From contig OZ218956.1 in the NCBI GenBank assembly GCA_965112735.1, positions 62,001 through 126,000 on the forward strand: DNA of 64,000 nucleotides. The letters are read 5' to 3'. This DNA comes from Phaeosaccion multiseriatum. Lineage: Eukaryota > Protista > Ochrophyta, other classes. This document shows positions 1,469 to 59,053 of this stretch, piece by piece; positions within the stretch are counted from its first letter, which is position 1; the number at the start of each line of letters is the position of its first letter. The notes under the pieces were generated by a model. The model ran no database searches, was not told the DNA's origin, and saw only the letters and a program-made list of their open reading frames with translations. Made by a program: the position numbers and the translations under genes.

Positions 1469-4400
1469 TCACCCGCCTCGGTGGTGGTCCTCCCCCTGCT
1501 TTATAGCAAGCAGCAGAGCGCAGCGCTTCACCGCCCACTTGGCATGCAGAGGCCATGCCAAGCCGAGGGGCCCTGTGTCCCCAGCCCAAGCCTTTCCGCC
1601 ATTGCGTGGGTCAAGAGTATCATCATCATCATCATCATCCGCATCAGCAGCAGTTGGTGATACAACAGGAGCAGGCACTCTCTCCTCTGATGCCCTCCTC
1701 ACCATGTGGAGGAGCTCCACGGGGCCAAACCCCGGGGGGCGCAGGCTCAGAATGCTCCGCAGCAGTCTGTCCAGCCTGCTGGGGGGTGGCAGCCTAGGGG
1801 ATGGCAGCCTAGGGGATGGCAGCCTAGGGGATGGCAGCCTAAGCCCTCCCGCCCCACTGCTCGGGTCAGGGCCCTCCCAGGCCGGCCCCAGCCAGAGGGA
1901 GTCAAGCAGCACCTCCTGGAAAACGGCACGGTGCTGCAGCGCCACTTGTCGGCAATACTCTTCCTCGCAAGCGGGCCCTCCTCCTTGCGTGCCGGCTGAC
2001 GCTGACGCTGGCCCCACGCCGCCGCTCCTTTGCTCGCTGGCAAGTGCTTCGCTCCTCTCGCCAGCGCCTCTCGCCGCACTCACCAAAAGGGCAAGGCGCT
2101 TCACCGCGGCCAGCACTCGCAGTATGGCACCCCACGGCAGCCTCCCGGTGGCGCGGGCACTCCTCCTCCCCTCGCCGGGCCTTTCCCGCCCTGTCTCCTC
2201 TTCCAGGGGGGCCTTGATCAAACGAAGGGCGTCCAGGAAGCGCCCCGACGCCAAAGCCAAAGCGACTCTTGCCTGTCTGTGAGGAGCCGACGCGTCCGTG
2301 GGGGAGGGGGGGAGGGCTGACAGCGCCGCTTCGCACACACGTTGAGAGGCAGGAGGCAGGAGGAGGGGCGAGTGGAGCGCAGAGTATCCCTGCTCCTGCT
2401 CACCCCCCACCTCCCTCTCCTTCGTGTCCTCTCCTGCATCGGTCTTCTTCTCCTGCTCCTCTTGCTCCCCATGCACACCCTCCGCCCCCCTCTTCGCCCC
2501 CTCGTCCCCCTCCTCTCCCTGGCTGTGCTTCTTCTCTCCTCTCTCTCCATACTGGCCCATATGCCTCCTCCGCCCGGTAAACGCCACATGACGGGCCACG
2601 TCGAGCACAAAGGGCACGAGCCAGGCCGGGCGGAAGCGAAACAGAGCGCGACAGCAGGCCTCATACCGCGCCGCTCCTCCACTTCCATCCCCCCAATCCG
2701 AGTACACTGACAAGAGGCGAGAGTCCACAGTCACCACCGCAGGGCCCTTCCCCTTCTTATCATCGCGCTGTGAGCACGTCGAGCTGGAAACCCTCTCACT
2801 GGGCAGATCCACACGCAGCAGCTCAAACAGCGACAGCCGCCCTTCCTCCCCCTCCCTGAGGTGGCCCGCCCCTCGTGGGGTGTCTTCGCTCCATACAACA
2901 TCCTCCTCAGCGGCCGAGAGCAGCAACACGCCCATCAGAGCCAGCCCGGAGGAGGAAAGAGAGCTCCCCCCTCCCCCTCCTGCAACCCCAGCCCTCAGCC
3001 CCCTTTCCCTTTGCTCGGTGTCAAGCACATGCCCATCCGCGCCGCTGTACGAGACTTGTCGTCTTCTTCGCTCTCTCCGGAAGGGCTGCGCACCCCCCTG
3101 GAGGATGTCTCCCTCTCCTCCGTCGTAGAGCCCCACCCACTCCCTCAGATGGCACCCTAAGGCCACATCCATAGGGTGTACGCCCCTCCTGTCCGCCCGA
3201 GCTGTCAGCAAGTCTTTAGCGTCCTCCTCGGTGTCATCTCTTCCTCCTCTCTCCGCTTCGCCTTCCCCTCGTCTGCGCGGGCCTGCTGCTTCTTCCCGTC
3301 CTCGCCTGACTCCCTCCTCCCCATCCTTCTCTTCTTGCATCACCAACTGCTGCTGCTGCTCCACACTCCCCAACCCTTGCCTCTTTGCCTTGTCCATGCC
3401 CGCCAGCACGCTTCTCACGGCCCGCAGCAGCTCCTCCAAGGACTGCGTCGCACCGCCCCGTCCGCGCACGGCACTCCTCATGGCGACCCTCAGCACCAGG
3501 GGCACGCTCGCTCCTCTCCCTGGCTGTCCTGCCCCTTCATCTCCCCACGCCAGGGCGTCCCCCACCTCCGACAAGGCGAGCGCCGCGACCTCTCCCTCCC
3601 TCGTCACTTCGTCCCTGCCGCTATTGACACATGCAGTGCCGCCGCTGCCGCCCATATGACTACTCCAGCGTGTGCCCATGCGTAGCAACTCCTCCGTGAG
3701 CAAGTGCGCGACGTGTCCTTCCGAGGCCCGCACCAAATGGCGGTAGTGCACCAACGCGTCCAGGAAGGGCCGGCAAGGGAGAGGTTTCCGAGTCGAGTCG
3801 CCTGAGGGGCGTCGTTGCCCCCTCGAGCTCCGTCCGCTGCTGCTGCTGCCCACATGACTGCTGCTGCCGCTGCTGCTCATCTGACTGCTGCTCATCTGAC
3901 TGCTGCTGGCGCTGCTCCCCGTCCTGCCCAGCTGAGGCCTGGCCGCAGCCGGGCCCCCATCGCAAGCCTCCCCCCCCTCTCCAGCTGCCACTGACCCATG
4001 CAACGCTCCTGCTGCTGCTCCTCCTGCCACTGCTGCCACTCCAGCGGAAGCCGACTCTGCGATACTCCTGACGCTGCCGTGCGTGGTGGTGCTACTGCTG
4101 CTGCCATCTGCGGCCGTAGTGAGGCCTTGAAGCGGCTGCTGCTGCCAGTGCAGGGAGTGCCTCCTCGCGGGTACTTTGAGGAGAAACACGCCCCCCCGGG
4201 GAGAGAGAAGTCCCATGCTGTGGCCCCTGCTGCAGGAGCGCCAGAAGCAGCTGCCGTGTTGTGTTGCAGGGGATGGCAGTGGATGGGGAGCGTGAGGGCG
4301 TGCGTGGGATCAAAGGGAGACAGACGGAGACACGGGAGACACGGGACGCAACAGAGCGAAGAAGTCAGGAAAGGAAGGGGGTCAAGCTTGGTCCGACTCT

Positions 4401-5160
4401 GCACCTGCTCAGCATCCGCTCTCCATCTGTGAGTCGCCCCGCAAAGAGCTTCGTGGGAAGATCCTGCCGCACCACAAGCTGCCCTGACAGGGCGTCGAAG
4501 ACGGAGCAGCAAAGGACGAGGCTGGACCCTCCCCCGCCCCCCCCCTGCGTTTCCGCTTCTCGACTTTGACTGAGGACGAGAACGAGGTCTCGGAACACCT
4601 CCATGGCCACCGCTCGAGGCGCCTGGCTATCCGTCTCCCACCGTCCTTGCCCTCCTTGCCCCTCCGCCTGAGCCTGGGCCTGCCCCACCCTCGGATTGTG
4701 ACTCAAAGCGCAAACCCCAACTCTCTTGACGAGCAGGCCCCCCGCATGGGCAAAGACGCGCAGCAGAGTGTTGCAGGGCCGCTGGAGCACCAACAGCTCC
4801 CCTGTGACATCGTGATGGGCGAAGAGCGGCTCCAGCCTACTCTTGCTCCTCTCGCTCAACGCCCCGCTACTGCTCCTCGCAACTCGCGAAGAGAGAGGTC
4901 TTACTCCCCCTCCCCCCCCTTCTGCGCCCCCCACTGCTCCTACTGCTGGTGTTGGTAGTGACGGTGTAGGGGTGGGAAGGACGGAGACCGCGGCGGCGCT
5001 GGCCGGGGAAGGCGGGGGGAAGGGGAGGGAGGGGGGGGGGTCTGCTTGGGCAGCCGGCGTGGCGGGGGCTGAAGACCATACGGAAGCCGGCCCGGCCCCT
5101 TGGGACGGCGCGGCGCCTGTGTGACTGCTGCCCATGCTGCTGAGGCTGCTGCGCCTCCTC

Positions 5161-5191
<31 letters not shown>

Positions 5192-7013
5192 CGCTGCTGC
5201 TGCCCATCTGACTGCTCCTGCTTTGACGCAGCCTCGTGGAGAGCAAGAGGCCCGTCTTTCGGCAGTTGAAGAGTACCTCCCATTCCGCGCCCCCCCCCTC
5301 ACCAGCGGCAGCGGCTGCGGTAAGCCCCCGTTGGAAAGCCTTCCTCTTGTCCCCCTGGTGGGGCTGCTGCACTACCCAAAGGCCCTTGGTGCTGCAAAAC
5401 AGACGCCCTGCGCCCCCCGAAGGGCATGCAGCGAGACTCACGGCAAAGCCCACTTCCAATTCGTACTCCGGCTGTCTCCTCGCCTCCTCTATTTTCTCCT
5501 CTCCCTCTCCCTCCTCCTTCTCATCATCCCCCTTGTTGTCGTCCTTCTCTCCGCCCACCACCTCCTCCTCTTTCTCCTCGTCCTCGTCTCCTCCTGTGCC
5601 GTTCTCCTTCCTCCCAGGTCCCTCCCAGTCTCCCGCCCCCCTCTCAAGCGCTCGCTCACCCCCTCCCTCCTCCTCCTCCTCCTCCTCCTCCTCCTCCTCC
5701 TCCTCCTCCTCTTCCTCCTCCTCCTCCTCCTCCTCCTCCTCCTCTTCCTCCTCCTCCTCCTCCGCCTCCTCCTCCTCTTCCTCCTCCCCCTCCTCTTCCT
5801 CCTCCACCTCCACCTCCTCCTCTTCCGCCTCCTCCTCCTCCTCCTCCTCCTCCTCCATCTCCTCCTCCGCCTCCTCCATCTCCCCCTCCCCCTCCTCTTC
5901 GTCCTCCTTCTCCTCCTCGTCGTCGTCGTCCTCGTCGTCGTCTTCCTCCTCCACAAGATTGGGTGCCTCAGGCTCGAGCCGGGTGAGTGTCACAACTCGG
6001 CTCCGCACGGACACGTCCCCCCTTGACGGGCAGTCGGCCTGGCGCCACACAAGGCGATATTTGCACACAGGAAGAAGGCCGGAGCGGGGAGCCTCCCCGT
6101 CATCCTCATGAGCACTAGCGGCGGCACACACCACCCTCCCCACAGTGGGTTGACCCTCGCCGTGGACGGGGGGGAGAAGGGAGAAGGCGTTGAGAAAGAC
6201 CCACCTCCCGCCCGGACCCCTCCTCCTCTCCTCTGCCTTGCAGCTCCCGCTCTGCCCTTCTGGGCTCGCTGGGCCTGGTGCTTCCACTTGTTGAGCCCCC
6301 CAAGGTGGCGGCGGTGGCGGTTCCCACTGCCACAGCCTTGTCAAGCCGCTTCCCTCCACGGCGAGGAGTCGTGTCACATCGGGCTCGGCGGGGTGGCGCA
6401 GAAAAGTGCACAGGACAAGCGGTGAATGGTGTGCTAAGATCAACAAGTCGCTCAAGAAACTGCCCCCAGAGGCTGCTACTGCCTGTGCCACGAGCGCTTC
6501 CACAAACTGAAGCGTGGGGTTGACCTTCCTGTTTCGGCCCCTCTTGCGGGCATTGCGTTTGCCGTCTCTAAGCTCATCCCCACTGCTGCTGTCTTCGCCA
6601 CTGCTGTAGCTATAACTGCCGCTCCTGCTTCTGTGCTGCTTTGCGCTTCCGTTTCGCAGCAGTGTGTCGAGAAGCTTGATTAGAGAGCTTGGTCCCCCCC
6701 CACCAGCGCCTCGAGACGTGGACGAGGGAAACACTTCCACGGCGTCCAGCAATACCGTCACAGCGCTGAGCACACCACTCCTCTCCTCCTCCTCCTCCTC
6801 CTCCTCCTCCTCCTCCTCCCTCTCCTTCTCCTGCTCCTGATCCCGCTCCTGCAAGTAGGCCCGGGTGTATGTGGCCGCTGCATGCCCACGAATGTGGACA
6901 AGCCTTTCAAGTGAGAGGGTGTCGCTCAGCTCCGCGAGGAGCTCGCCGCCTCTGAGCGCAGGCCTCTGGCGGGAAAGCCACTCCAAGCCAACGCTTTCGC
7001 CGCCCGTCTTCAT
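1469..7013 (-). CDS. HPS6: HPS6-like protein (BLOC-2 subunit, Hermansky-Pudlak syndrome 6 family), about 1796 aa, 2 exons
   Basis: Exons 7013-4405 and 4250-1469 are joined in frame by a phase-2 GT-AG intron (4404-4251). Motifs are colinear with animal HPS6 as I recall it: SPLVLCTFL..LLAVEGSGLTRLW; GRVVCAAA..RLVW; MEVFRDLVLVL..FDALSGQLVVRQDL; YEACCRALFRFRPAWLVPFV; LALASGRFLDALRL; LLRSILSLRPPGFGPVELLHMVR. Confidence 0.7.
5661..5950. repeat. (TCC/GAG)n trinucleotide expansion encoding a poly-Glu/Asp tract in the HPS6-like exon
   Basis: Near-continuous TCC repeats, read as EEEE... on the minus strand. Confidence 0.9.
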
Positions 7014-13640: not shown

Positions 13641-16603
13641 CTAGCGGGTCCTGCTCACTGGCCCCAGGCCTGCCCTCGGCCTTACGAGGGCGAGCATCAC
13701 GGCTGCACGCGACGCCCTCGAGATGTACTCCTTGCTCGCCAGCAGCAGTGCACTCTAAAGGGAGGGAGGGAGGGAGGGAGGGAGGGAGGGAGGGAACGCC
13801 AAACGGGTAGGATAGGACCGTCAGGCGTGCGGCGCTACAGCAGTCACAGACAGAGACGTTACAGAAATCACACACAGAGACGTTACAGAAATCACACATA
13901 GAGACGCAATACACAGATAAACAAACAGACAGACAGAGAGATGCTTAACGCTATAGAAATCACAGACAGAGACGCGACAGCAATCACAGACAGAGACGTT
14001 ACAGAAATCACACATAGAGACGCTACAGCAAATACACAGACAGAGACGATACAGCAATCACAGACAGAGACGCGACAGCAATCACAGACAGAGACGTTAC
14101 AGAAATCACACATAGAGACGCTACAGCAAATACACAGACAGAGACGATACAGCAATCACAGACAGAGACGCGACAGCAATCACAGACAGAGACGTTACAG
14201 AAATCACAGACAGAGACGCTACAGCAATCACAACAGAGACGTCACAGAAATCACAGACAGAGACGTTACAGAAATCACAGACAGAGACGTTACAGAAATC
14301 ACAACAGAGATGATACAGAAATCACAGACTGAACGCTACAATAGACCCCTCCTGACCTTGAGGATGGTGTGGAAGAGCTGTCCGCCCACTCCGTGGAAGA
14401 AGCCCCACACCCCCTCGTCTCTGAGGATGGCTCTCAGCGCCCCCGCAAGCGTGAGGTCGCTGGCAGAGTCGCCCCCCCCTCCCTTCCCTCCCTTCTCTCC
14501 CTTCCCGTCCTTGTCCGTGGGCCCTCCGCCCCCCCCCGCCTGCTTCCGCTGAGCCATGACGATGACCTGCGATGGACGCCAAGAGGAGTCAGCACAGCCT
14601 TCCCTCTTCTCTCGCCCTCGTCCTCTTCCTCACAGCACACATACATGCCATTCCTCCACCCCCCGCCCCATATGCCTCTGCCCAGTCCTCACCTTTGCTC
14701 TGATGAGGGGGTAGGTGAGTAGTGTCGCAACGGCCTTTGCCAGCGCGGCAACAAGAAACGCTGCCCAGGGCCCCAAGTAGTCCTGCTTGGGCCCCAACCC
14801 CCCCAACCCCCCTAACCCCCCCCCGCGGACCCTCAGCAGCCTGGCCTTGAGTGCATCGAAGAGCGTAAAGTTTATGGCGGGATTGCACGTCAGCGCGAGC
14901 GCGGGCGCGAGGCCGTTCCAGAAGCGCCGAACTCCGCCCTCTGCGAGCATGTCCAGCACGTGCGTGGACAGGTGCCGCCGCCGCCTCCCCCGCCGCCCGC
15001 CGCCATCGCCCCCCTGCACTTGCTCCAGCCCCTCACTATCCTCTGCTCTGCTGACAGGGGCAGAGGCAGGGCTGGTGCTGGGATGGTCCGAAGACGGCGA
15101 GGACGAGCCCCACACGAGTGCTGACGCTGACGCTGACGCTGACGCTGACGCTGACGCTGACTCTGACTTTGCCGCTGAGTCCAAGTCGCCAAGATCTCCT
15201 CCTCCTCCTCCTCCTCCTCCTCCTCCTCCTCCTCCTTCCCCCCCCTGCCCAGCAGACGGAGAGGCTGAGCCAGCGGAAGAAAGAGATAGCTCTGTCGGTG
15301 TTGTTGAGTATGAGTCTCCTTCGTCGTCACCATCATCCCCACTCCCTTCCAAGTCGGTTTGCACTCGCGTCGTGATGTTCTCCAGAGGAAGCGTGACGAG
15401 CTGATTCACGGACGCTGTGCAGGCCGAGGGAAGGGAAGGGAAGGGAAGGGGTCGGACAAGGCGGACAGGGCTCTGAGTCGGGATGTCTCTGTGGAAAGGG
15501 AGGGCGAGACAGATATACTATGCCCTGTGACACTGAGGGGTGACAAGTGCGGCAAGAGGCAAGCAGCGAGGGAGCTGCTGCGAGCAACATGAGTCCTCTC
15601 TTTCGCTCCTATACCTGCCAGAGTGGCTGAGAGGAGACTCAGGGCGGTGGGGCCGAAGGAGTACCGCCTCTTCAGCACCACCTGCAACGAGGACGGAAGA
15701 GAAGGGGGCAAGGAGGATGTAAGGGGGACACAGTGACTTGACAGACTCTTCCGGGCGGTAGTGAGGGAGGATTCATGCCCAGCGGCTCCGATACAGTCAT
15801 CCGTACAAGCCCACTCGGGGAGGCATGTATCGCCCCCCACATCGTGTGTCCAACCACAGGCCACAAGAGGTTCTCAGGACAATACTGCCCAAACATTCAT
15901 CAGTGGAAATGAAAGCATCCACTCTGCCCCCCCCCCCCCCAACCCATACACCCACCTTGAGCCAAGCGAAGACGTAAAAGTAGAGAAAGCTGCCGCACAG
16001 CGTGGTGAGCAGCTTCACCCCCAGGCCCCTCCACAGCGCCCCCGCCCCTCCCCGCCGCAGCATGCCCACCAGAGAGGTGAGTAGGCGACTGCACAGCCAC
16101 AGACGAGACGAGGGGCACTGCTCACACCCCTCACATCCTTCCTCTCTCGCCTCTTGCTCCCCCACACTACCCCCGTCTTCTCGCGGCGGCGGAGGCGGAT
16201 CGCCACCATCTCCACCTCCATAACTTGAGGTTGAAGCGCTAATACTCGAAGCCATCTGCTGCTGGCCCTCCTTCTGTTCCTGCTCTTCTTGCTCCTGCTC
16301 CTCCTGCTCGTCCTGCTTGTCCTGCTCCTGCTGCTCCTCCTGCTCTTCCTCCTCCTCCTCCTCGTCGTCGTCGTCCTCGTCCTCCTCCTCATCCGTATGT
16401 GCCTTCATCAGCTGCTCTTCCTGCTCCTGCAAAAGGCTCTCCCTTCTCCTCCTGCCGCACGGCGTGTCTTGCATGCTCTGGACACGTGTCTTGGCGACGT
16501 CCAGGGGATAGCACATGGCAGTCGAAAGGACCGCCCCCATGCCTCCCGCCACGGCATCAGCAAACGCCGCCACACTCGCGCTTACCTCCCCATGTTCCTC
16601 CAT
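13641..16603 (-). CDS. Mitochondrial carrier family (SLC25) protein, peroxisomal adenine nucleotide carrier (PNC/ANT1/SLC25A17)-like, 5 exons
   Basis: Three carrier repeats: YPLDVAKTRVQ..LWRGL; LPLENITTRVQ..FWNGLAPALALTCNPAINFTLFD; TYPLIRAK..GFFHGVGGQLFHTILK|SALLLASKE. NPAI and YPLIRAK are typical of the peroxisomal subgroup. Stop TAG at 13641-13643. Confidence 0.88.
13845..14340. repeat. Intronic minisatellite, about 22-24-bp degenerate unit (CAGAGACGTTACAGAAATCACAGA)
   Basis: About 20 imperfect tandem copies, with higher-order duplication, in the last intron of the carrier gene. Confidence 0.9.
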
Positions 16604-27785: not shown

Positions 27786-31313
<3,528 letters not shown>

Positions 31314-32203
31314 GGTATGTCTGTAAGCACCGGGCAGGCAGCTCAGCTGAAAACGGGGGTGGGGTCCACGGCCTTGCTTAAGACAAGGCCCTCTCTCTAA
31401 GTACGAAATCTGATACCGTCGGTAATTGAAGAGAGGGGCGGGAGGCGTCAGACCGGGCAAAAGGAGATCAGGTGAGGGCGCGGTGGGGAGAGGAGGGTGC
31501 ACAGTACGGGGAGGGGCGGAGCTTTGAGCGTCTGCGTTGCGCACTTGACCCTTCTCTTGGAAAGGATCTGCGTCCCCGTTTTGGTGAGGAAGCTTTGGAG
31601 GGGTGGGGAATTTACACCTCGGGGCTCCGGAGGACTGGGATGGGACGCATGGAAGTCTATATCGGAGGTCAATGCCTGCGCTCTCTTCCTGTGCCGGTGT
31701 ACGTTCGCCGCTGGCCCAGTCCGGCTGGAAGAAGATAAAGACGGTTCTCCGACCGAGCTGAGGCTCTGAGAAGCAACCATGGGGGGGAGACAGCCGGAGA
31801 GGACCACAGAACAGTAGCAAAGAGATCTTGTAGAGTTAACCGCACTGATCCATTGTTGAGGACCAGGGGTTGCGCACTCTCAAGTGGATGAGGTTTCTTA
31901 TTCTTTCTTTTCACCTTCCCCCTTCCGCCTCTCTCCCTTTCTCCCCCTCCCTTGTGGGCTTGTGTGTAATACTCCAAAACTCACATTTCTCAGCCTACCG
32001 GCTTGCGTGATATATCTACTACGAGTGCATCGTCTGGCGGGTCTGCCCGCCTCTGTTGAAGGCTCAGCGCGCAGAGCCTGGCTCAAAGCTCAACCAAAAT
32101 ATTTGTGAGGGAGAGTACCCTCCGAGAGGCGCGCGCTCGCCTTGGGCGGGCTAGAAGGAGCTCCTTAGCCTGCAGAGGGTAGTGTAGAAAGGCGTGCGTG
32201 GGT

Positions 32204-42500: not shown

Positions 42501-45500
42501 GGGGACCCCGGGGGGCGAGGAGGAGGCATCCCCAGGGGGGGACGGCAAGGGCGCCGTGCTGGACGTGCGAGCGTTGGGCGGGGCCCTCTGCAGCAAGCTC
42601 GTGAGCATGCGAAGGGACGGACGAGCGGACAAAGGGGTGGACAAGGGTGGGCTGCTAGGCTGTCTGCACGTGCTAAGGGACCTCATCCGTCTGGCGCCTG
42701 GGGGGGTCGAGGCGGTGCTGGGCGGGTCCGAGCTGGGCAACGACCCTGTTACCATCTTGCTGGAAGACTTTTTGCTCACCAGACAGACGCTGCTGGGCGT
42801 GGATGGGGCGGAGCAGGAAGAGGAGGCGGAGGCGGAGCAGTTGGTGGTGCAGGGCGGGGATGGCAGTGGACGGGGCGGCAAGGCCAAGGCCATACTGTAT
42901 CCCATCTGCAGGGGATCTCTGGCGCGTCGGGCGGCCTTCGACGTGCTCTGTGCCTGCGCAGGAAGGAGCCCGCCTCTGCTGAGGCAGGTGCACGGGGTCG
43001 TCAGTGCCTTCAAGGACCAGGTACGGTGCCAGGTGCAGTGGTGCGGCGGTTGGTCGTAACATGAAAAAAGTGACAACTGTGAAAGATACCACTGTCGTGA
43101 GCTCGGTCCGTCCGTCTGTGCCTTGCTTGCTTTGTTTGCTTTCTGGCTTTCGCTCGCTTGCCTGATTCCCTCCTACTGATCGTTCCTGTTCCTGACCATT
43201 TTAATTTCAACGTGAATTTGGCATCTGTCTCGTGTTAGGTGGTTCCCGGGCTGCGGCACCGCTGGGGCTGTGAGTGCTCCTTCGACGCCAAGTCACAGAT
43301 GGCCTTCGTGGGGCTGAAGAACCAAGGCTGCACCTGTTACATGAACAGCCTGCTGCAGCAACTCTTCATGGTGCCTCAGCTGAGGAGCGCCATACTCGGG
43401 GCCAAGCTGCGTCGCACGAGCAGAGCGCTCATGCTGCCGCCGGCTCTGCGCCAGGCCAGGCTCATCGGCCGCCGCCTGGAGATCAAGCACAAGGATGGCA
43501 GCCTATTGGACGCCACGGTGGTCAAGTACGACGAGGACAGCGGCATGCACACCGTCAGGTGGGTGGGGTGGGGGACTGCCAGGTTGGATGGCTGGATGGC
43601 TGGACGGGTGGATGGAGGGAAGCATATGTTCTTTCTCTCCCTCTCGGCCTGTCCACTTGCTCCTCGACGGCCCAAGGGCCCCTTGCGACTGACTGGGAGC
43701 AACTCCCCTTTGAGTCTTTGCTATCCCCTCCCGACCATCCTCGCACATCTATCCAATCGTCTTTGTATCTGTTGCTCCACGACCACCCACCCACGCATCA
43801 TCAGGTACCATCCCAACACGGAAGCCACGTACAACCTCACAGACGGGCGGCCCGGCAAGGAGACAGGCCACTTCAGCGTGCTGGACCACGAGGGGGAGGT
43901 CATCTTCACGTTCAAGGACGACGAGGAAGAGAAGGGCGCCGACAGCGACGGCGACAAGGACGGCAAGGACAACAGCGCCAAGAAGGAGGAAGACGAGGCC
44001 ACGCGGCTGCTGCTGGAGCAGGTGCAGCGCACTTTCGCCTACCTTCGGGACAGTGAGAAGCGCTTCTTCGACCCTCGCTCTCTGGTGGAGGCATGCCGCT
44101 GCCTCAACCTTCAGTACCTTGTCTATCAGCAAAACGACGCCTCGGAGTTCTGCGACCAGCTGCTGGACAAGCTCGAGCTAGGCCTCAAGGGCAAGCCGCA
44201 GGAGCGCGACCTGAAGCGGGCCTTTGGCGGAGGTCTGGTGTACCAGAAGATCCCCAGGGGCTGCAACCATCGCACAAGCAGGCAGGATCCCTTCATCAAT
44301 CTCGAGCTCATTATTAGGGGCAAGGAGAGCATTCAGGAGAGCCTCGGCGCCCTGACGGAAGGCGAACTGATGGACGGGGACAACAAGGTGGAGTGCGAGG
44401 ACTGCGGAGTCAAGAAGGACACCATTCGCCGCACGTGCTTGGGTCGCCTCCCGAACCTTCTCATCCTTCACTTGAAGCGCTTCGATCTGGACTACACCAC
44501 CTTCGAGACGGTCAAGCTCAACGACCGCTGCGCCTTCCCCATGCGCCTCAACCTCAAGCCCTACACGCAGCGCGGCATCGAGGAGAGGGAGGCGTTGGAG
44601 GAGGCCCTAAAGGCTGCCAAGGAGAGGGCAGGGGGGGGCGACCTCACCCTCGCAGAGAAGGAGAGCCTAGAGGACAAGGGCGGGCAGAGAAGCGTATCGG
44701 GGGGGGGGAGAGGAGGCGGTAAGGGCAAGGAGGGGGCGGGTGCAGCTGGCGACGACGATGATGATGTGGAGTACGAGTACGAGCTGCAGGGCATCCTTGT
44801 ACACTCGGGTGTGGCGCAAGGTGGACACTATTACAGCTTCATCAGGGAGAGGAGCGCCATGGGGAAGGGCGGCACAGAGGGGTGGAAGGGGGGTGCTGAT
44901 GCAGCGGTTGGTGGTACAGCGGCAGGGGCAGCGGCAGGGGCAGCGCAAGATCAGGGGGAGACTGAGGAGGGCAGCAAGGAGGGGGACCGGGACAGGTGGT
45001 TCCGTTTCGACGACGATGACGTGACGCCCTTTGACCCATCGCACATCGAGTCGTGCTGCTTTGGCGGCACCTACAGCACCACCAACACGTGGCAGGGCGT
45101 CACCAACACGGTGGAGCAGGAGCGCATGGCCAACGCGCTGCTGCTCTTTTATGAGAAGGTCACGCCGGCCAAGCTGGAGGGGGAGGAGGAGGAGGAGGAG
45201 GCTAAGGAGGAGGAGGGAGGTGGCAGTGGCGGAGGGAAGGGTGAGCCTGTGCCTCAGCAGCAGCAGCAGTTGGTGGTACCGAAGCAGGAGGTGGTGCTAA
45301 AGCAGGAGGCGGCAGGGGAGGAAGGGGAGGAGGAGGAGTATCCGATGACAAGTGGAGAGGAGTGCTTCGCGCCGGAGGTGTGGCGGGCCAACGTGCGTTT
45401 CATTCAGCACTGCGCCGTGTTCGACACTGAGCTGCACCGCTTCGTGTTCGAGCTCGTCAAAATGGCAGTGGATGGCGACAGCGAGGCGCGCACAGAGGTG

Positions 45501-47258
45501 CTGCAGCTCGGCGTGGCTCTGCTCCTTGACGTCATCCTGCACAGCAGAGAGAGGTGAGTGGGGCGTGGGTGCGTGGGTGCGTGTGGGGTGTGCGTGTGAG
45601 GGGTGTCCGGGGGCATGCCTCTGCCTCTGATTTTCGGATTGTGCGGATACAAGGAGCCTCCCCTCCTTTCTTTTCCTTCCTTCCCTCCCTTCCTTCCTCC
45701 CTCCATCGCTCACTCCCTCCCTCCTTCCCTCCCTTCCTTCCTCCCTCCATCGCTCACTCCCTCCCTCCCTCCCTCCCTCCCTCCCTCCCTCCCTCCCTCC
45801 CTCCCTCCCTTCCTTCCTTCCTCCCTCCATCGCTCACTCCCTCCCTCCTTCCCTCACTTCCTTCCTCCCTCCATCGCTCACTCCCTCCCTCCTTCCCTCC
45901 CTTCCTTCCTCCCTCCATCGCTCACTCCCTCCCTCCCTCCCTCCCTCCCTCCCTCCCTCCCACCTTTTTCTTTTTCTTTTTCTCTCGCTCCCTGCCCTTC
46001 CCTTCCTCTCTTCCCCCTCTCCCCCTTTCCCCCTTTCCCCCAGGGTGGGCGTGAAGGCATGGCATGACGTGCTGGGGCCTGCTCTGGGGAGCGATGTCGA
46101 GGCCTGCCGCCTGCTCGTCGACTCCATGAACCATCCCGCTGTGGGCACCCCGGGCTGGCTGCGGCTGTATATGCTCGAGTGCCCCGCCTCGGAGCAGGTG
46201 GCCAAGAAGGCCGCGGTCACCGTCTTCACCGCCATCATTAGGAGCCTGGCCAAGGTGAGCACTAGGCGAGCACTGCACTAAGCACTAAGCACGCATGTGT
46301 CCTGGTGTCATCACTGTGTGTGCTCCCTCTCAGGCTCAGGCTCTGTTTCAGGCTGTGTTTCAGGCTCTGTTTCAGGCTGTGTTTCAGGCTCTGTTTCAGG
46401 CTGTGTTTCAGGCTCTGTTTCAGGCTCTGTTTCAGGCTGTGTTTCAGGCTGCGTTTCAGGCTCTGTTTCAGGCTCTGTTTCAGGCTGTGTTTCAGGCTCT
46501 GTTTGAGGCTGTGTTTCAGGCTCAGGACGTGTGGTCGGGATGTCGGTTGGGGCATTGGCTGTGCGCTTCCTTCGGCGCTCTACCCATCATTCCCTCTGCT
46601 CTACTCTTATCTGCCCATACGCCTCTGCTCAATCCATGTGCCTCTCCCTTGCGCGCGAGCCTCGAGGGCAGCGGAGATGATCCTCACGCGACTTGCGACC
46701 CCCAACCCTCACGTATCCTCCCTACTACCCTCCCTACTACCCTCCCTACTACCCTCCCTACTACCCTCCGTTCCTTGCCTTACTCCCTCGGCTGCTCTCC
46801 TCCCTCCCAAGGACCCGGAGGAGGCGGCGGCGCTGGCGAGGAGCAACGGAGCGGGAGAGCCCACCTTGGGCAGCAGCTCGCCCCCCTCGGGCAGCAGCGG
46901 CGGCGGCAGCAGTAGCAGCAGTAGCGGCAGTAGCAGGAGTAGCAGCAGCCGCGTGTGCCTCTGGCTGGACGCGGTGACAGCCCTCCTCGCAGAGGTGCCC
47001 CAGTACTGGCGGCAGGCAGAGGAGCTGTTCCTGCTCATCAGAGAGCTTGCGGCCTGCGACGCCAACGTGTGCCTGTACCTCGTGCGCGGAGACATGGTGG
47101 CAAGGCTCGCCAACTTCGTGCTGCGCGACAAGGCTAGTGACGAGCTCAGGCAGGCCTTCCCCCCCGTGGCGGCTCTGGGCATGCTGCAGCACGCCCCTGA
47201 GTACATGTACGTGCTCGAGGCCATCGCCATGCTGCTCGGGGCAAGCCAAGTCAAGAAG

Positions 47259-56769: not shown

Positions 56770-59053
56770 ATGGGGAAGGGGGCGAAGAGCAAAGGGGGGA
56801 GCGCAGCTACTGGTAAATCGGGAAAAGGAGGTAAAGGGACAAAGGGCGGCGGCGGTGGCGGCAAGGGGGCAGGCAAAGGTAAAGGCAGAGACTCACCGGC
56901 AGATGAGGTTGTGCCCAGCAAGAAGCAGGAGAGGGCCAAGAAGGCGGAGCTGAAGAAGAGACGGAACAAGGAAAAGCACAGAGCCACAGATGCGGTGAGT
57001 GAGTAGCTCGACAAGAGTGAGGCTTCGCCTTGGCTTAGGCCTTCGTTTTTCTTCCTGCAATCTCCTCCTTCTGCTCACGTCCCTCCGTACCCTTGGCAGG
57101 AGGACAAGCTGTTCGAAGAGCAGCTCAAGAAGATGGGCCTGCGCATCACCCCCATCCGGGGGGACGGAAATTGCCTCTTTCGCTCCATTGCAGATCAACT
57201 TTTGGGGGACCACGACAAGCACGCCCAAGTGCGGAAAGAGGTGCGTGGCACTCCAGGTCTCGCGCACGCGTCCTTTCTGCATGCACTCGAATGAAAAGGC
57301 AGCAGCACAGCCTCCCCTCTCCTCCCCTCCTCTCGTCTCGCGTCCCACCTGCTGCCCGCCTGGCCTGGAAGAGCATGACAACTCGACTCCTTCTTCCTCT
57401 CAGAGAGAGAGAGTCTCAGCCCGTCTGCTTCGGCTCCATGGTCCCCGCACCCCCCTCCAGATCGTGCAGTACATGGTGTCAAAGGAGGACCTCTTCTCCC
57501 TCTTCATGGAGGACGATGAGACGTTTTCAGACTACGCTGAGCGCATGGCCGGAGACGCCGAGTGGGGAGGGCACCAGGAGCTGTACGCCGCCAGTCAGGT
57601 AGGTGCACATGGGTGGGGTGGGGACGAGGCTCGACCGTCCGTCCGTGACTTACGCCTCTGCTCTCTCCGTCGATGCCTTCCGATCATGCTTGCCTCGTGC
57701 CTGCCTCCCTTGGCCTCCTCTCATCGATGTTGGCTGCAGTTGTACTCTGTGACCATGGTGGTGCACCAACTGGCCGCCCCCCGCTTCGAAGTGGCATGCG
57801 AGCCCCGGCAGGCGAGAGAGCTGCACCTGAGCTACCACGGAGAGGCGCACTACAACAGTGTCCGGAGCGAGGAGGACAGCGGCGCGGGGCCGGCCCTGCC
57901 CATCAATGTGAGTGGGCGAGAGAGAAAGAGAGGGGAGAGGGGAGAGGGAGGGAGGGAGGGGAGGATCGGCGAAGAGGTGGAGGTGGCGGCGCTCCATGAG
58001 GAAGGGCAGGTGGGCGGGCCTCTAACCAGTGGGGATTTGCTGCTCTCTCTGACGGAAATTGCTCGGCAGCGGACAGAGGGCATCTCCACCATTGCCCACC
58101 AACGCCTTCGGCCCCTTTGTCTCTCTCGTATCCTCGCCCCTGTTGTGCCCGCCCGCATGTGTATGTGTATCAGCTGGCGTCCGCCCAAGCTTCGCCGAGT
58201 GGAGGGCGTGGTAGTGGTGGTGGTGGTGGAGGAGGAGACCGTAAGAAGGAGACCAGCAGTGGGTCGGGACAGTCTCCAGCGGAGGAGGTGCGTCCGTAAG
58301 GGCGGTGTTCAGAAGTTCAGTCTCTCTCTCTCTCTCTCTCCCTCTCCTCCCATATTCTCTTCTCTTCACTCTTCTCTCTCCCACCCTCTCTTTTCTCCCG
58401 CTTTCTCTCGTGGCTGTGGGAAGAAGCAAAGAAGGCACGTTGATTGATGTCGCCCTTCTTCCCTTTCTCTCTCCCCCTGCTGCTCGCTTCCCCCCCCTCC
58501 CCATCCCCTCTCTCGCTGACTTACTGCTCGCATGGCCCATGGCCCGCCTCTGCAGCTTGTGATGCGCAGCTGCCCGGGGGTGGACGCGGCCGGTGCCAAG
58601 CGGGCCTTGAGCTTGTCAGGCGGCGACGCTATGAATGCCGTGGAGCTCGTCCTCGCAGGGGGGCTGGAGCTGGAGGAGGAGGAGGGAGGGAGGGAGGAGC
58701 CCGGCCACTTGTATGGGGGAGAGGAGGAGGGAGGCGATGGGGCCAAAGAAGGCGACGCAAAAGGAGGAGGAGGACGAGGACGAGACGGGGTTGCTGCGTC
58801 AGGCGCTGTGGAGGGACAAGAGGAGACCAAGCGCAGGACGGGAGAGTCAGGGACAGGAGGTGTGGAGGTGACCAAGAAGGTGGCACGGGGCTCGGCCTGT
58901 CCGTGCGGCAGCGGCTTGAAGTATAAGAAGTGCTGCAGGAAGAGGGAGAAAGCTCTCAAGGGAAGGGCCGGGACGGGTGACTGCGGGCAGCAGCAACAGC
59001 AGCAGGCCGCGGAAAGGGCCGTCGGAGACGAGTTCGGGGCGCTGCAGATTTGA
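56770..59053 (+). CDS. OTU-domain deubiquitinase (OTUD3/plant OTU7-like) with a UBA-like domain and a SEC-C motif, 6 exons
   Basis: IRGDGNCLFRSIADQL, WGGHQEL, LHLSYHGEAHYNSVR; UBA-like AKRALSLSGGDAMNAVELVL; SEC-C CPCGSGLKYKKCC; C-terminus FGALQI*. Confidence 0.93.

What the first reader, a model, noticed from the sequence alone, without database searches (positions are those of the whole stretch)
1469..7013. Divergent, greatly expanded HPS6 (BLOC-2) homologue in a probable alga
Seen in sequence: two ORFs splice in frame into about 1800 aa, with six or more motif blocks in the same order as animal HPS6 (from recall), for example YEACCRALFRFRPAWLVPFV vs [20 protein letters not shown] and SLRPPGFGPVELLHMVR vs RLCPPELAPAELLLLLR. 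Established: HPS6 is a BLOC-2 subunit for lysosome-related organelle biogenesis, studied mainly in animals. Inference: this lineage has BLOC-2-type sorting for a specialised organelle. The protein is more than twice the animal length because of low-complexity inserts, so automated annotation would probably miss it.
Basis: partly seen in the sequence, partly recalled or inferred. Interest (0 to 1): 0.72.

Follow-up and report, generated by a model that had tools for sequence, protein, structure and literature searches.

The report
Divergent HPS6-like propeller-solenoid gene
This alga has a real two-exon gene for a 1,796-residue protein, with relatives only in brown algae, whose single database resemblance is a short, below-threshold match to HPS6, a protein that helps animals build lysosome-related organelles; HPS6 identity is therefore likely but not proven.

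Summary
Two minus-strand ORFs (7013-4405 and 4250-1469) join in frame across the only canonical frame-keeping GT-AG intron (4404-4251), giving 1,796 codons, about 36% of them low-complexity.

I found orthologues on brown-algal contigs, one from Ectocarpus fasciculatus. They have four conserved coding blocks and are collinear with the window protein from start to stop, across the splice junction too. So this is one gene in a conserved stramenopile-alga family.

An AlphaFold model of an orthologue's N-terminal part is a beta-propeller. A model of the window's C-terminal part is all-helical. HPS6 has the same layout, but so do many trafficking proteins.

The HPS6 assignment is only partly supported.
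- HPS6_C is the only Pfam family that recurs: window E 0.044-0.14, 23 of 24 family members at E <= 1, best 3.8e-5 at 23.2 bits.
- Every hit is below the 27-bit cut-off and covers one stretch of about 30 residues.
- The other conserved blocks and the N-terminal part match nothing, and fold and language-model searches gave nothing.
- No HPS3, HPS5, RMC1 or HOPS/CORVET model matched.

I put HPS6 homology at about 0.6. That would extend HPS6 from oomycetes to photosynthetic stramenopiles. I could not test for a BLOC-2 pathway.

The parts
4405..7013 (-). Exon 1 (ATG at 7013; 869 full codons plus 2 nt). It holds an N-terminal segment followed by a beta-propeller region interrupted by poly-E, S-rich and P-rich inserts.
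   Evidence: ORF. hhalign of the brown-algal exon-A profile against this exon: E 1.2e-4 over 383 columns, aa 194-856. Collinear blocks in the MAFFT alignment A5. Weak N-terminal match to brown-algal block A0, E 0.012, aa 6-124.
4251..4404 (-). Intron of 154 nt, GTGCAG...CAG.
   Evidence: It is the only canonical GT-AG pair that keeps the frame in the interval allowed by the two stop codons. Both flanks are homologous to one continuous brown-algal exon.
1469..4250 (-). Exon 2 (926 codons plus stop at 1469-1471). It holds the last propeller strands, a middle helical region and a C-terminal helical domain.
   Evidence: ORF. A local HMM of brown-algal exon C hits this frame at E 2.9e-15, with no comparable hit among the 1,014 six-frame ORFs of the window. 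Exon-B blocks align to the middle part.
4407..6434 (-). Region homologous to the brown-algal beta-propeller exon (aa 194-869 of exon 1).
   Evidence: Alignment A5. The AlphaFold model of the orthologue L005 is all-beta, pTM 0.59. It matches 7-bladed propellers: Foldseek E down to 1.8e-5, VIA Z 13-15 for Nup88, Sec12, Vps39 and Vps11.
5475..5963 (-). Acidic low-complexity insert, largely poly-Glu (aa 351-513 of exon 1), in a propeller loop.
   Evidence: Translation and entropy mask. It falls where the brown-algal orthologues have a short variable loop of low pLDDT. GC skew is -0.73 in this stretch.
2810..3850 (-). Middle region equivalent to brown-algal exon B, with conserved blocks such as VHPMDVALGCHLREWVG.
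   Evidence: Alignment A8. hhalign E 0.11, weak but collinear.
1472..2809 (-). C-terminal helical domain (last 446 aa) carrying five conserved blocks shared with brown algae.
   Evidence: Alignment A3. AlphaFold model with mean pLDDT 66.5, pTM 0.56, helices only.
2603..2680 (-). Block 1, the HPS6_C-like motif (RYEACCRALFRFRPAWLVPFVLDVAR).
   Evidence: Pfam PF20468 HPS6_C aligns at profile positions 171-196 of 387: E 0.14 with the whole ORF and 0.044 with the C-terminal part. The same block gives E 3.8e-5 to 0.07 in 23 of 24 family members.

Best explanation
The locus is one two-exon gene for a 1,796-residue cytosolic scaffold protein. It has an N-terminal beta-propeller with long disordered acidic and Ser/Pro-rich loops, followed by a long helical (solenoid-like) C-terminal half.

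It belongs to a family conserved between this alga and brown algae. That family is most likely the very divergent ochrophyte counterpart of HPS6, the propeller/solenoid subunit of BLOC-2.

By inference from animal HPS6, it would act as a non-enzymatic subunit of an endosome-associated sorting or tethering complex that directs carriers from endosomes to a vacuole- or lysosome-related compartment.

Shown here: the gene model, the conserved family, the fold classes, and the recurring sub-threshold HPS6_C match.
Inferred only: orthology to HPS6, the partners and the cellular role.
For: Gene model.

Family:
- Exhaustive phmmer with exon 2 found one true relative, P0001, at E 7.6e-5.
- A word search with a profile found 23 proteins, one named Ectocarpus fasciculatus.
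- The genomic loci show four conserved coding blocks.

Collinearity with the window over its whole length:
- exon C HMM, E 2.9e-15;
- exon A hhalign, E 1.2e-4 over 383 columns;
- end of exon A against the start of exon 2, E 0.016;
- exon B, E 0.11;
- block A0, E 0.012;
- alignments.

Fold: propeller and helical C-terminus. The literature describes HPS6 as beta-propeller/alpha-solenoid (PMC10193976, PMC11513930).

HPS6 signal:
- PF20468 is the only Pfam family hit by exon 2.
- It is hit by 23 of 24 members, best E 3.8e-5 at 23.2 bits, always at profile positions about 169-198.
- It was absent from 10 other ORFs of the same GC-rich window scanned at E <= 10.
- The block lies about three quarters of the way along the protein, which from my own estimate of the domain layout is roughly where it lies in animal HPS6.

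HPS6 is already known in another stramenopile group, the oomycetes, where it also needed profile-profile methods to be found (PMC11513930).
Against: - All HPS6_C scores (12-23 bits) are below Pfam's gathering score of 27 and cover only about 30 of 387 profile positions.
- Blocks 2-3 and 4-5 scanned alone gave no HPS6_C hit in five members.
- No block of the N-terminal half or middle (A0, exon A, exon B) hit the HPS6 N-terminal model or any other family convincingly.
- The family members are related, so 23 hits are not 23 independent tests.
- Language-model look-alikes of the window's C-terminus were nucleoporin- or Vps16-like at noise level, 0.82-0.85. A brown-algal member gave no usable hit.
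- Fold searches of the C-terminal model gave nothing meaningful.
- The published survey reports BLOC-2 as almost absent from Diaphoretickes outside oomycetes (PMC11513930), so the partners HPS3 and HPS5 may be missing.
Confidence: 0.6

Rival explanations
1. It is an ochrophyte-specific beta-propeller/alpha-solenoid protein that is not HPS6. It could be a lineage-specific protocoatomer-type protein or a very divergent member of another trafficking family. On this reading the single HPS6_C-like helix is a chance or convergent resemblance.
For: Only one stretch of about 30 residues matches, always below the Pfam cut-off. The other conserved blocks and the whole N-terminal half are silent. Structure and embedding searches do not point to HPS6. 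The propeller matches many families equally well at Z 13-15.
Against: A best E of 3.8e-5 against 24,736 models remains about 1e-3 after allowing for the roughly 35 sequences scanned. HPS6_C is the only family that recurs. It does not appear in 10 control ORFs of the window. The matched block is the best-conserved block of the algal family and is not low-complexity. No other propeller-solenoid family model gave any hit at E <= 10.
Confidence: 0.33
2. It is the alga's RMC1/Bulli-type third subunit of the Mon1-Ccz1 Rab7 GEF, or a comparable accessory subunit of a tri-longin GEF, rather than a BLOC-2 subunit.
For: RMC1 has the same propeller/solenoid layout, is reported to be pan-eukaryotic, and has been speculated to be related to HPS6 (PMC11513930, PMC10193976).
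Against: No Pfam RMC1 model was hit at E <= 10 by either exon or by any family member. No solved Mon1-Ccz1-Bulli chain appeared in the profile searches against PDB sequences or stood out in the fold searches.
Confidence: 0.04
3. The two ORFs are separate genes, or chance ORFs in GC-rich DNA, and do not form one protein.
For: Long ORFs are common in DNA of 64% GC.
Against: Both ORFs carry blocks collinear with one brown-algal gene. The brown-algal exon A spans the window's junction. A unique canonical intron restores the frame.
Confidence: 0.03

Closest known systems
Animal HPS6 (BLOC-2 subunit; Pfam PF15702 HPS6 and PF20468 HPS6_C)
   Same: It has the N-terminal beta-propeller plus C-terminal helical layout. 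One conserved helix-turn block aligns to HPS6_C positions about 169-198 in the window protein and in 23 of 24 relatives.
   Different: It is 1,796 aa against roughly 775-800 aa for animal HPS6 (length from my own knowledge). The match is below the family cut-off. The N-terminal model is not hit. The other C-terminal blocks give no signal. It has long acidic and Ser/Pro inserts. Partners are unknown.
Oomycete HPS6 proteins reported by More et al. 2024 (PMC11513930)
   Same: They come from the same supergroup (stramenopiles), were also unannotated, and were also detectable only by sensitive profile methods. They would be the expected closest true HPS6 relatives.
   Different: I could not compare them directly, because no oomycete sequence could be obtained by reference. 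Oomycetes also have HPS3 and HPS5, while the same survey reported an almost total lack of BLOC-2 elsewhere in Diaphoretickes.
Unannotated brown-algal proteins (P0001, P0003-P0024; loci L002-L012; one 'unnamed protein product' of Ectocarpus fasciculatus)
   Same: They are true orthologues. They are collinear over the whole length and share blocks in the propeller, middle and C-terminal regions.
   Different: Identity is only 20-28% in the C-terminal domain. They are about 1,400 aa with four coding blocks and different intron positions. The window protein has much larger low-complexity inserts.
RMC1/Bulli and HOPS/CORVET propeller-solenoid subunits (Vps39, Vps11, Vps41 and others)
   Same: They share the fold class. 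The Vps39 and Vps11 propellers are among the structural matches at Z about 14.
   Different: There is no sequence-profile match to any of their Pfam models. The structural matches are no better than those to Nup88, Sec12 or WD40 proteins in general.

Membership tests
HPS6 (BLOC-2) | Match to Pfam HPS6_C (PF20468) at or above the gathering score of 27 bits | tested here: not met
   The window scores 11.5-13.1 bits, E 0.14-0.044. Relatives score 12.5-23.2 bits, best E 3.8e-5. The hits are consistent and specific but sub-threshold, and cover only profile positions about 169-198 of 387.
HPS6 (BLOC-2) | Match to the Pfam HPS6 N-terminal model (PF15702) | tested here: not met
   There was no hit at E <= 10 for window exon 1 or its parts, and none for brown-algal blocks A0, A or B.
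HPS6 (BLOC-2) | N-terminal beta-propeller followed by a C-terminal alpha-solenoid | tested here: met
   The orthologue's exon A is modelled as a propeller. The window's last 446 aa are modelled as helices only. This feature is not specific to HPS6.
HPS6 (BLOC-2) | HPS6 is the best or only family hit, in the reciprocal sense | tested here: inconclusive
   HPS6_C is the only recurring Pfam family, and no other propeller-solenoid family is hit. I could not run the reverse search from a genuine HPS6 or a profile-profile search.
HPS6 (BLOC-2) | Several collinear conserved blocks shared with animal HPS6 | tested here: inconclusive
   Only block 1 is detected by the Pfam model. Blocks 2-5 scanned alone gave no HPS6_C hit. 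No HPS6 sequence was available for a direct alignment.
HPS6 (BLOC-2) | Assembles with HPS3 and HPS5, with those genes present in the genome | not testable with these tools
   Only this window can be read. Earlier notes on the genome mention no HPS3, HPS5 or BLOC. PMC11513930 reports BLOC-2 as almost absent from Diaphoretickes outside oomycetes.
RMC1/Bulli | Match to the Pfam RMC1 N- or C-terminal models | tested here: not met
   There was no hit at E <= 10 or at E <= 1 in 24 members.
HPS3, HPS5, HOPS/CORVET subunits | Match to HPS3, HPS5, Vps39, Vps41 or clathrin-repeat models, or a C-terminal RING | tested here: not met
   There were no such Pfam hits. The C-terminus ends in a helical block (LKxCLLLL) with no RING.

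The most novel reading that the evidence does not exclude
Photosynthetic stramenopiles (brown algae and this alga) have kept a working BLOC-2-like pathway. On this reading HPS6 is so divergent that surveys missed it, HPS3- and HPS5-type partners are equally hidden, and the pathway serves a lineage-specific lysosome-related compartment such as physodes or another acidic storage or secretory vesicle. BLOC-2 would then be ancestral to all stramenopiles, not an oomycete peculiarity.
Probability: 0.25. Interest if true: 0.65.

Novelty: new member of a known kind. Interest (0 to 1): 0.45.

Why it matters
BLOC-2 is studied almost only in animals. The most thorough survey (PMC11513930) found HPS6 outside Amorphea only in oomycetes, and described the patchy distribution of BLOC-2 in Diaphoretickes as puzzling.

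A conserved HPS6-like gene in brown algae and in this alga would fill part of that gap. It would push the origin of the stramenopile copy back to the common ancestor of oomycetes and ochrophytes. It would also give a concrete candidate for reverse genetics in algae with unusual acidic or secretory organelles.

If the HPS6 link fails, what remains is a conserved, unannotated propeller-solenoid family specific to ochrophyte algae. That is modestly interesting in itself.

Tried and rejected
- Word-index search with exon 2 alone found nothing in the 503-1,601 aa range, because low-complexity words swamped the candidate list.
- The same search with alignment A6, with the 915-aa exon 2 first to reach full-length proteins, found nothing. 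The words probably came from the low-complexity first 500 residues, so that search was wasted.
- Sequence and profile searches against PDB chains found nothing. No BLOC-2 structure seems to exist.
- Language-model search of the ESM Atlas gave nucleoporin- or Vps16-like rows at noise level for the window and no usable hit for P0004.
- Fold searches of the C-terminal model (atlas, Foldseek PDB, VIA wide) gave only chance-level rows.
- Two metagenome scans for further relatives found none.
- tblastn and plain hmmsearch did not find the N-terminal homology. hhalign and MAFFT did.
- BLASTP of the first 193 aa against one brown-algal N-terminus was not significant. A profile gave a weak E of 0.012.
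- P0002, an RCC1-repeat protein at E 6e-4, was rejected as a single-repeat chance match.
- An exact-product look-up of exon 2 in public assemblies found nothing on record.
All searches went exon by exon, by reference. Only a 75-nt junction context was translated inside a script to check the frame.


Full report
**Observation**

The window carries two long minus-strand ORFs: 7013-4365 (882 aa from ATG) and 4216-1469 (915 aa from ATG). The sequence between them reads ...CTGAGCAG|GTGCAG...CACGGCAG|CTGCTTC....

The upstream frame ends at a stop at 4367-4365. The downstream frame opens after a stop at 4312-4310. I enumerated donors and acceptors in that interval. There is a single AG acceptor (intron end 4251), and only one canonical GT donor keeps the frame with it (4404). 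This gives a 154-nt intron and a model of 2609 + 2779 nt = 1,796 codons. About 36% of the residues lie in low-entropy runs: poly-Glu, Ser-, Gly- and Pro-rich.

**Relatives**

- A word-index search with exon 2 found nothing.
- The exhaustive phmmer search with exon 2 found two proteins below E 1e-3. P0002 is an RCC1-repeat protein that matches one short stretch, and I set it aside.
- P0001 (535 aa, E 7.6e-5) shares five collinear blocks with the window's C-terminus.
- A profile of the two found 23 proteins of about 480-600 aa on Logan, ENA and NCBI contigs. One is named 'unnamed protein product [Ectocarpus fasciculatus]'. These are last-exon fragments of a larger gene.
- In nine fetched loci the + strand carries four conserved coding blocks in the same order: A0 (about 185 aa), A (about 480), B (about 275) and C (about 500).

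**One gene, collinear from start to stop**

- A local HMM of block C hits the window's exon 2 frame at E 2.9e-15. The next-best of the 1,014 six-frame ORFs of the window scores E 0.17.
- hhalign of the block A profile aligns 383 columns to exon 1 residues 194-856 (E 1.2e-4).
- The end of block A aligns to the first 39 residues of exon 2 (E 0.016).
- Block B aligns to exon 2 residues 142-447 (E 0.11).
- Block A0 aligns to exon 1 residues 6-124 (E 0.012).
- The MAFFT alignments show the shared motifs directly. Examples are LLAVEGSGLTRLWQWE / YACIEASGLLRLWKWG, KYRLVWRQAD / RHRLVWEQED, PLFAHHDVTGELLVL / RLFAVHDxTGDLMxYD, CCSVFDALSGQLVV / VCSVYDLCTGRLLG, HPMDVALGCHLREW / DPATALFEGTLREW, and the five C-terminal blocks.

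The residues CFWRSCSRGHSMGLL lie upstream of the second ORF's ATG and match the brown-algal LWxSxTRGHLxGxL. The brown-algal exon A thus spans the window's intron. That is independent support for the splice and for a single gene. The C-terminal block (LKxCLLLL) sits just before the stop in both, so the 3' end is also right. The weaker matches (E 0.01-0.1) would mean little alone. They count because they fall in the expected order.

**Fold**

- AlphaFold on the window's last 446 residues with the 24-sequence alignment gave mean pLDDT 66.5 and pTM 0.56, with helices only.
- AlphaFold on a brown-algal block A with ten sequences gave mean pLDDT 62 and pTM 0.59, with about 24 strands.
- The second model matches beta-propellers in general: Foldseek E down to 1.8e-5, and VIA Z 13-15 for Nup88, RAVE, Sec12, Vps39 and Vps11.
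- The low-confidence loops of that model coincide with the places where the window protein has its poly-Glu and Ser/Pro inserts.

So the family is beta-propeller plus helical C-terminal half. This is the architecture described for HPS6 (PMC10193976, PMC11513930). HOPS/CORVET, RMC1, SEA, COPI, IFT and nucleoporin subunits share it.

**Is it HPS6?**

For:
- Pfam gives exon 2 a single family, HPS6_C (PF20468): E 0.14 for the whole ORF and 0.044 for the last 446 aa.
- 23 of 24 family members hit HPS6_C at E <= 1. Individual E-values run from 3.8e-5 (23.2 bits) to 0.07, always at profile positions about 169-198. No other family recurs.
- Ten other ORFs of the same GC-rich window scanned at E <= 10 never hit HPS6_C. 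They returned sensible families instead: mitochondrial carrier, Nop/Prp31, UCH and OTU.
- No HPS3, HPS5, RMC1, Vps or nucleoporin model was hit.

Against:
- Every score is below the curated 27-bit cut-off.
- The match is one stretch of about 30 residues.
- Blocks 2-3 and 4-5 scanned alone gave no HPS6_C hit in five members.
- Blocks A0, A and B hit nothing.
- ESM Atlas look-alikes were noise-level nucleoporin or Vps16 rows, or none.
- Fold searches of the helical model were uninformative.
- There is no HPS6 chain in the PDB sequence set to compare with.
- I could not obtain any genuine HPS6 sequence by reference, so I could not run a profile-profile or reverse search.

Allowing for about 35 related sequences scanned, the best E-value still corresponds to roughly 1e-3. 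Together with the architecture and the absence of competing families, I put HPS6 homology at about 0.6.

**Context in the literature**

More et al. 2024 (PMC11513930) found HPS6 in Holozoa, apusomonads, Amoebozoa and, by HHblits only, in oomycetes. [quoted passage not shown]

An ochrophyte HPS6 would therefore be a new lineage for a known family, plausibly inherited from the stramenopile ancestor. It would not by itself show that the alga has BLOC-2, because HPS3 and HPS5 were not found in such algae by that survey and I could not search for them.

**Organism**

Earlier notes on this genome call it an alga, once 'green' and once 'stramenopile'. The only relatives of this gene are phaeophyte, at 20-28% identity. 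This fits a stramenopile alga that is not itself a close relative of brown algae. Neither ORF 2 itself nor any close relative of it is on record in the public protein collections searched.

**Limits**

All work was exon by exon, by reference.
- One of the three word-index searches was wasted.
- Two metagenome scans found no further relatives.

**Verdict**

This is a real, correctly described gene and a conserved algal propeller-solenoid family. It is a probable but unproven, very divergent HPS6 homologue. I class it as a new member of a known kind, of moderate interest.

Noticed in passing
window 3485-3595 (-), aa 208-244 of the second ORF: The stretch ALSEVGDALAWGDEGAGQPGRG resembles a single RCC1 repeat (P0002, E 6e-4 in the exhaustive search). 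It is one copy only, inside a block that aligns with brown-algal exon B, so it is probably chance.
   Followed up: partly
window 14630-16603 (-), 28960-31820 (-), 43239-45557 (+), 56999-58447 (+): Pfam names the neighbouring ORFs: two mitochondrial-carrier exons, a Prp31-type gene (Nop domain plus Prp31_C), the UCH catalytic core of the large USP gene, and an OTU-like protease at 22.8 bits, just under the cut-off.
   Followed up: no
L002, L003, L005, L006, L008-L012 (coordinates): The brown-algal orthologue has four conserved coding blocks separated by short introns. The window gene has a single intron at a different place, inside the part that is one exon in brown algae. Intron positions are therefore not conserved between the two lineages.
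   Followed up: partly
window 1600-1700 (-), aa 793-812 of the second ORF: A short tandem peptide repeat (LPSPR three times, then LPPPS) is inserted between C-terminal blocks 3 and 4, where the brown-algal proteins have no insert.
   Followed up: no
whole genome (earlier notes): Earlier notes on this genome disagree on whether it is a green or a stramenopile alga. The only relatives of this gene are phaeophyte, which favours a stramenopile.
   Followed up: partly
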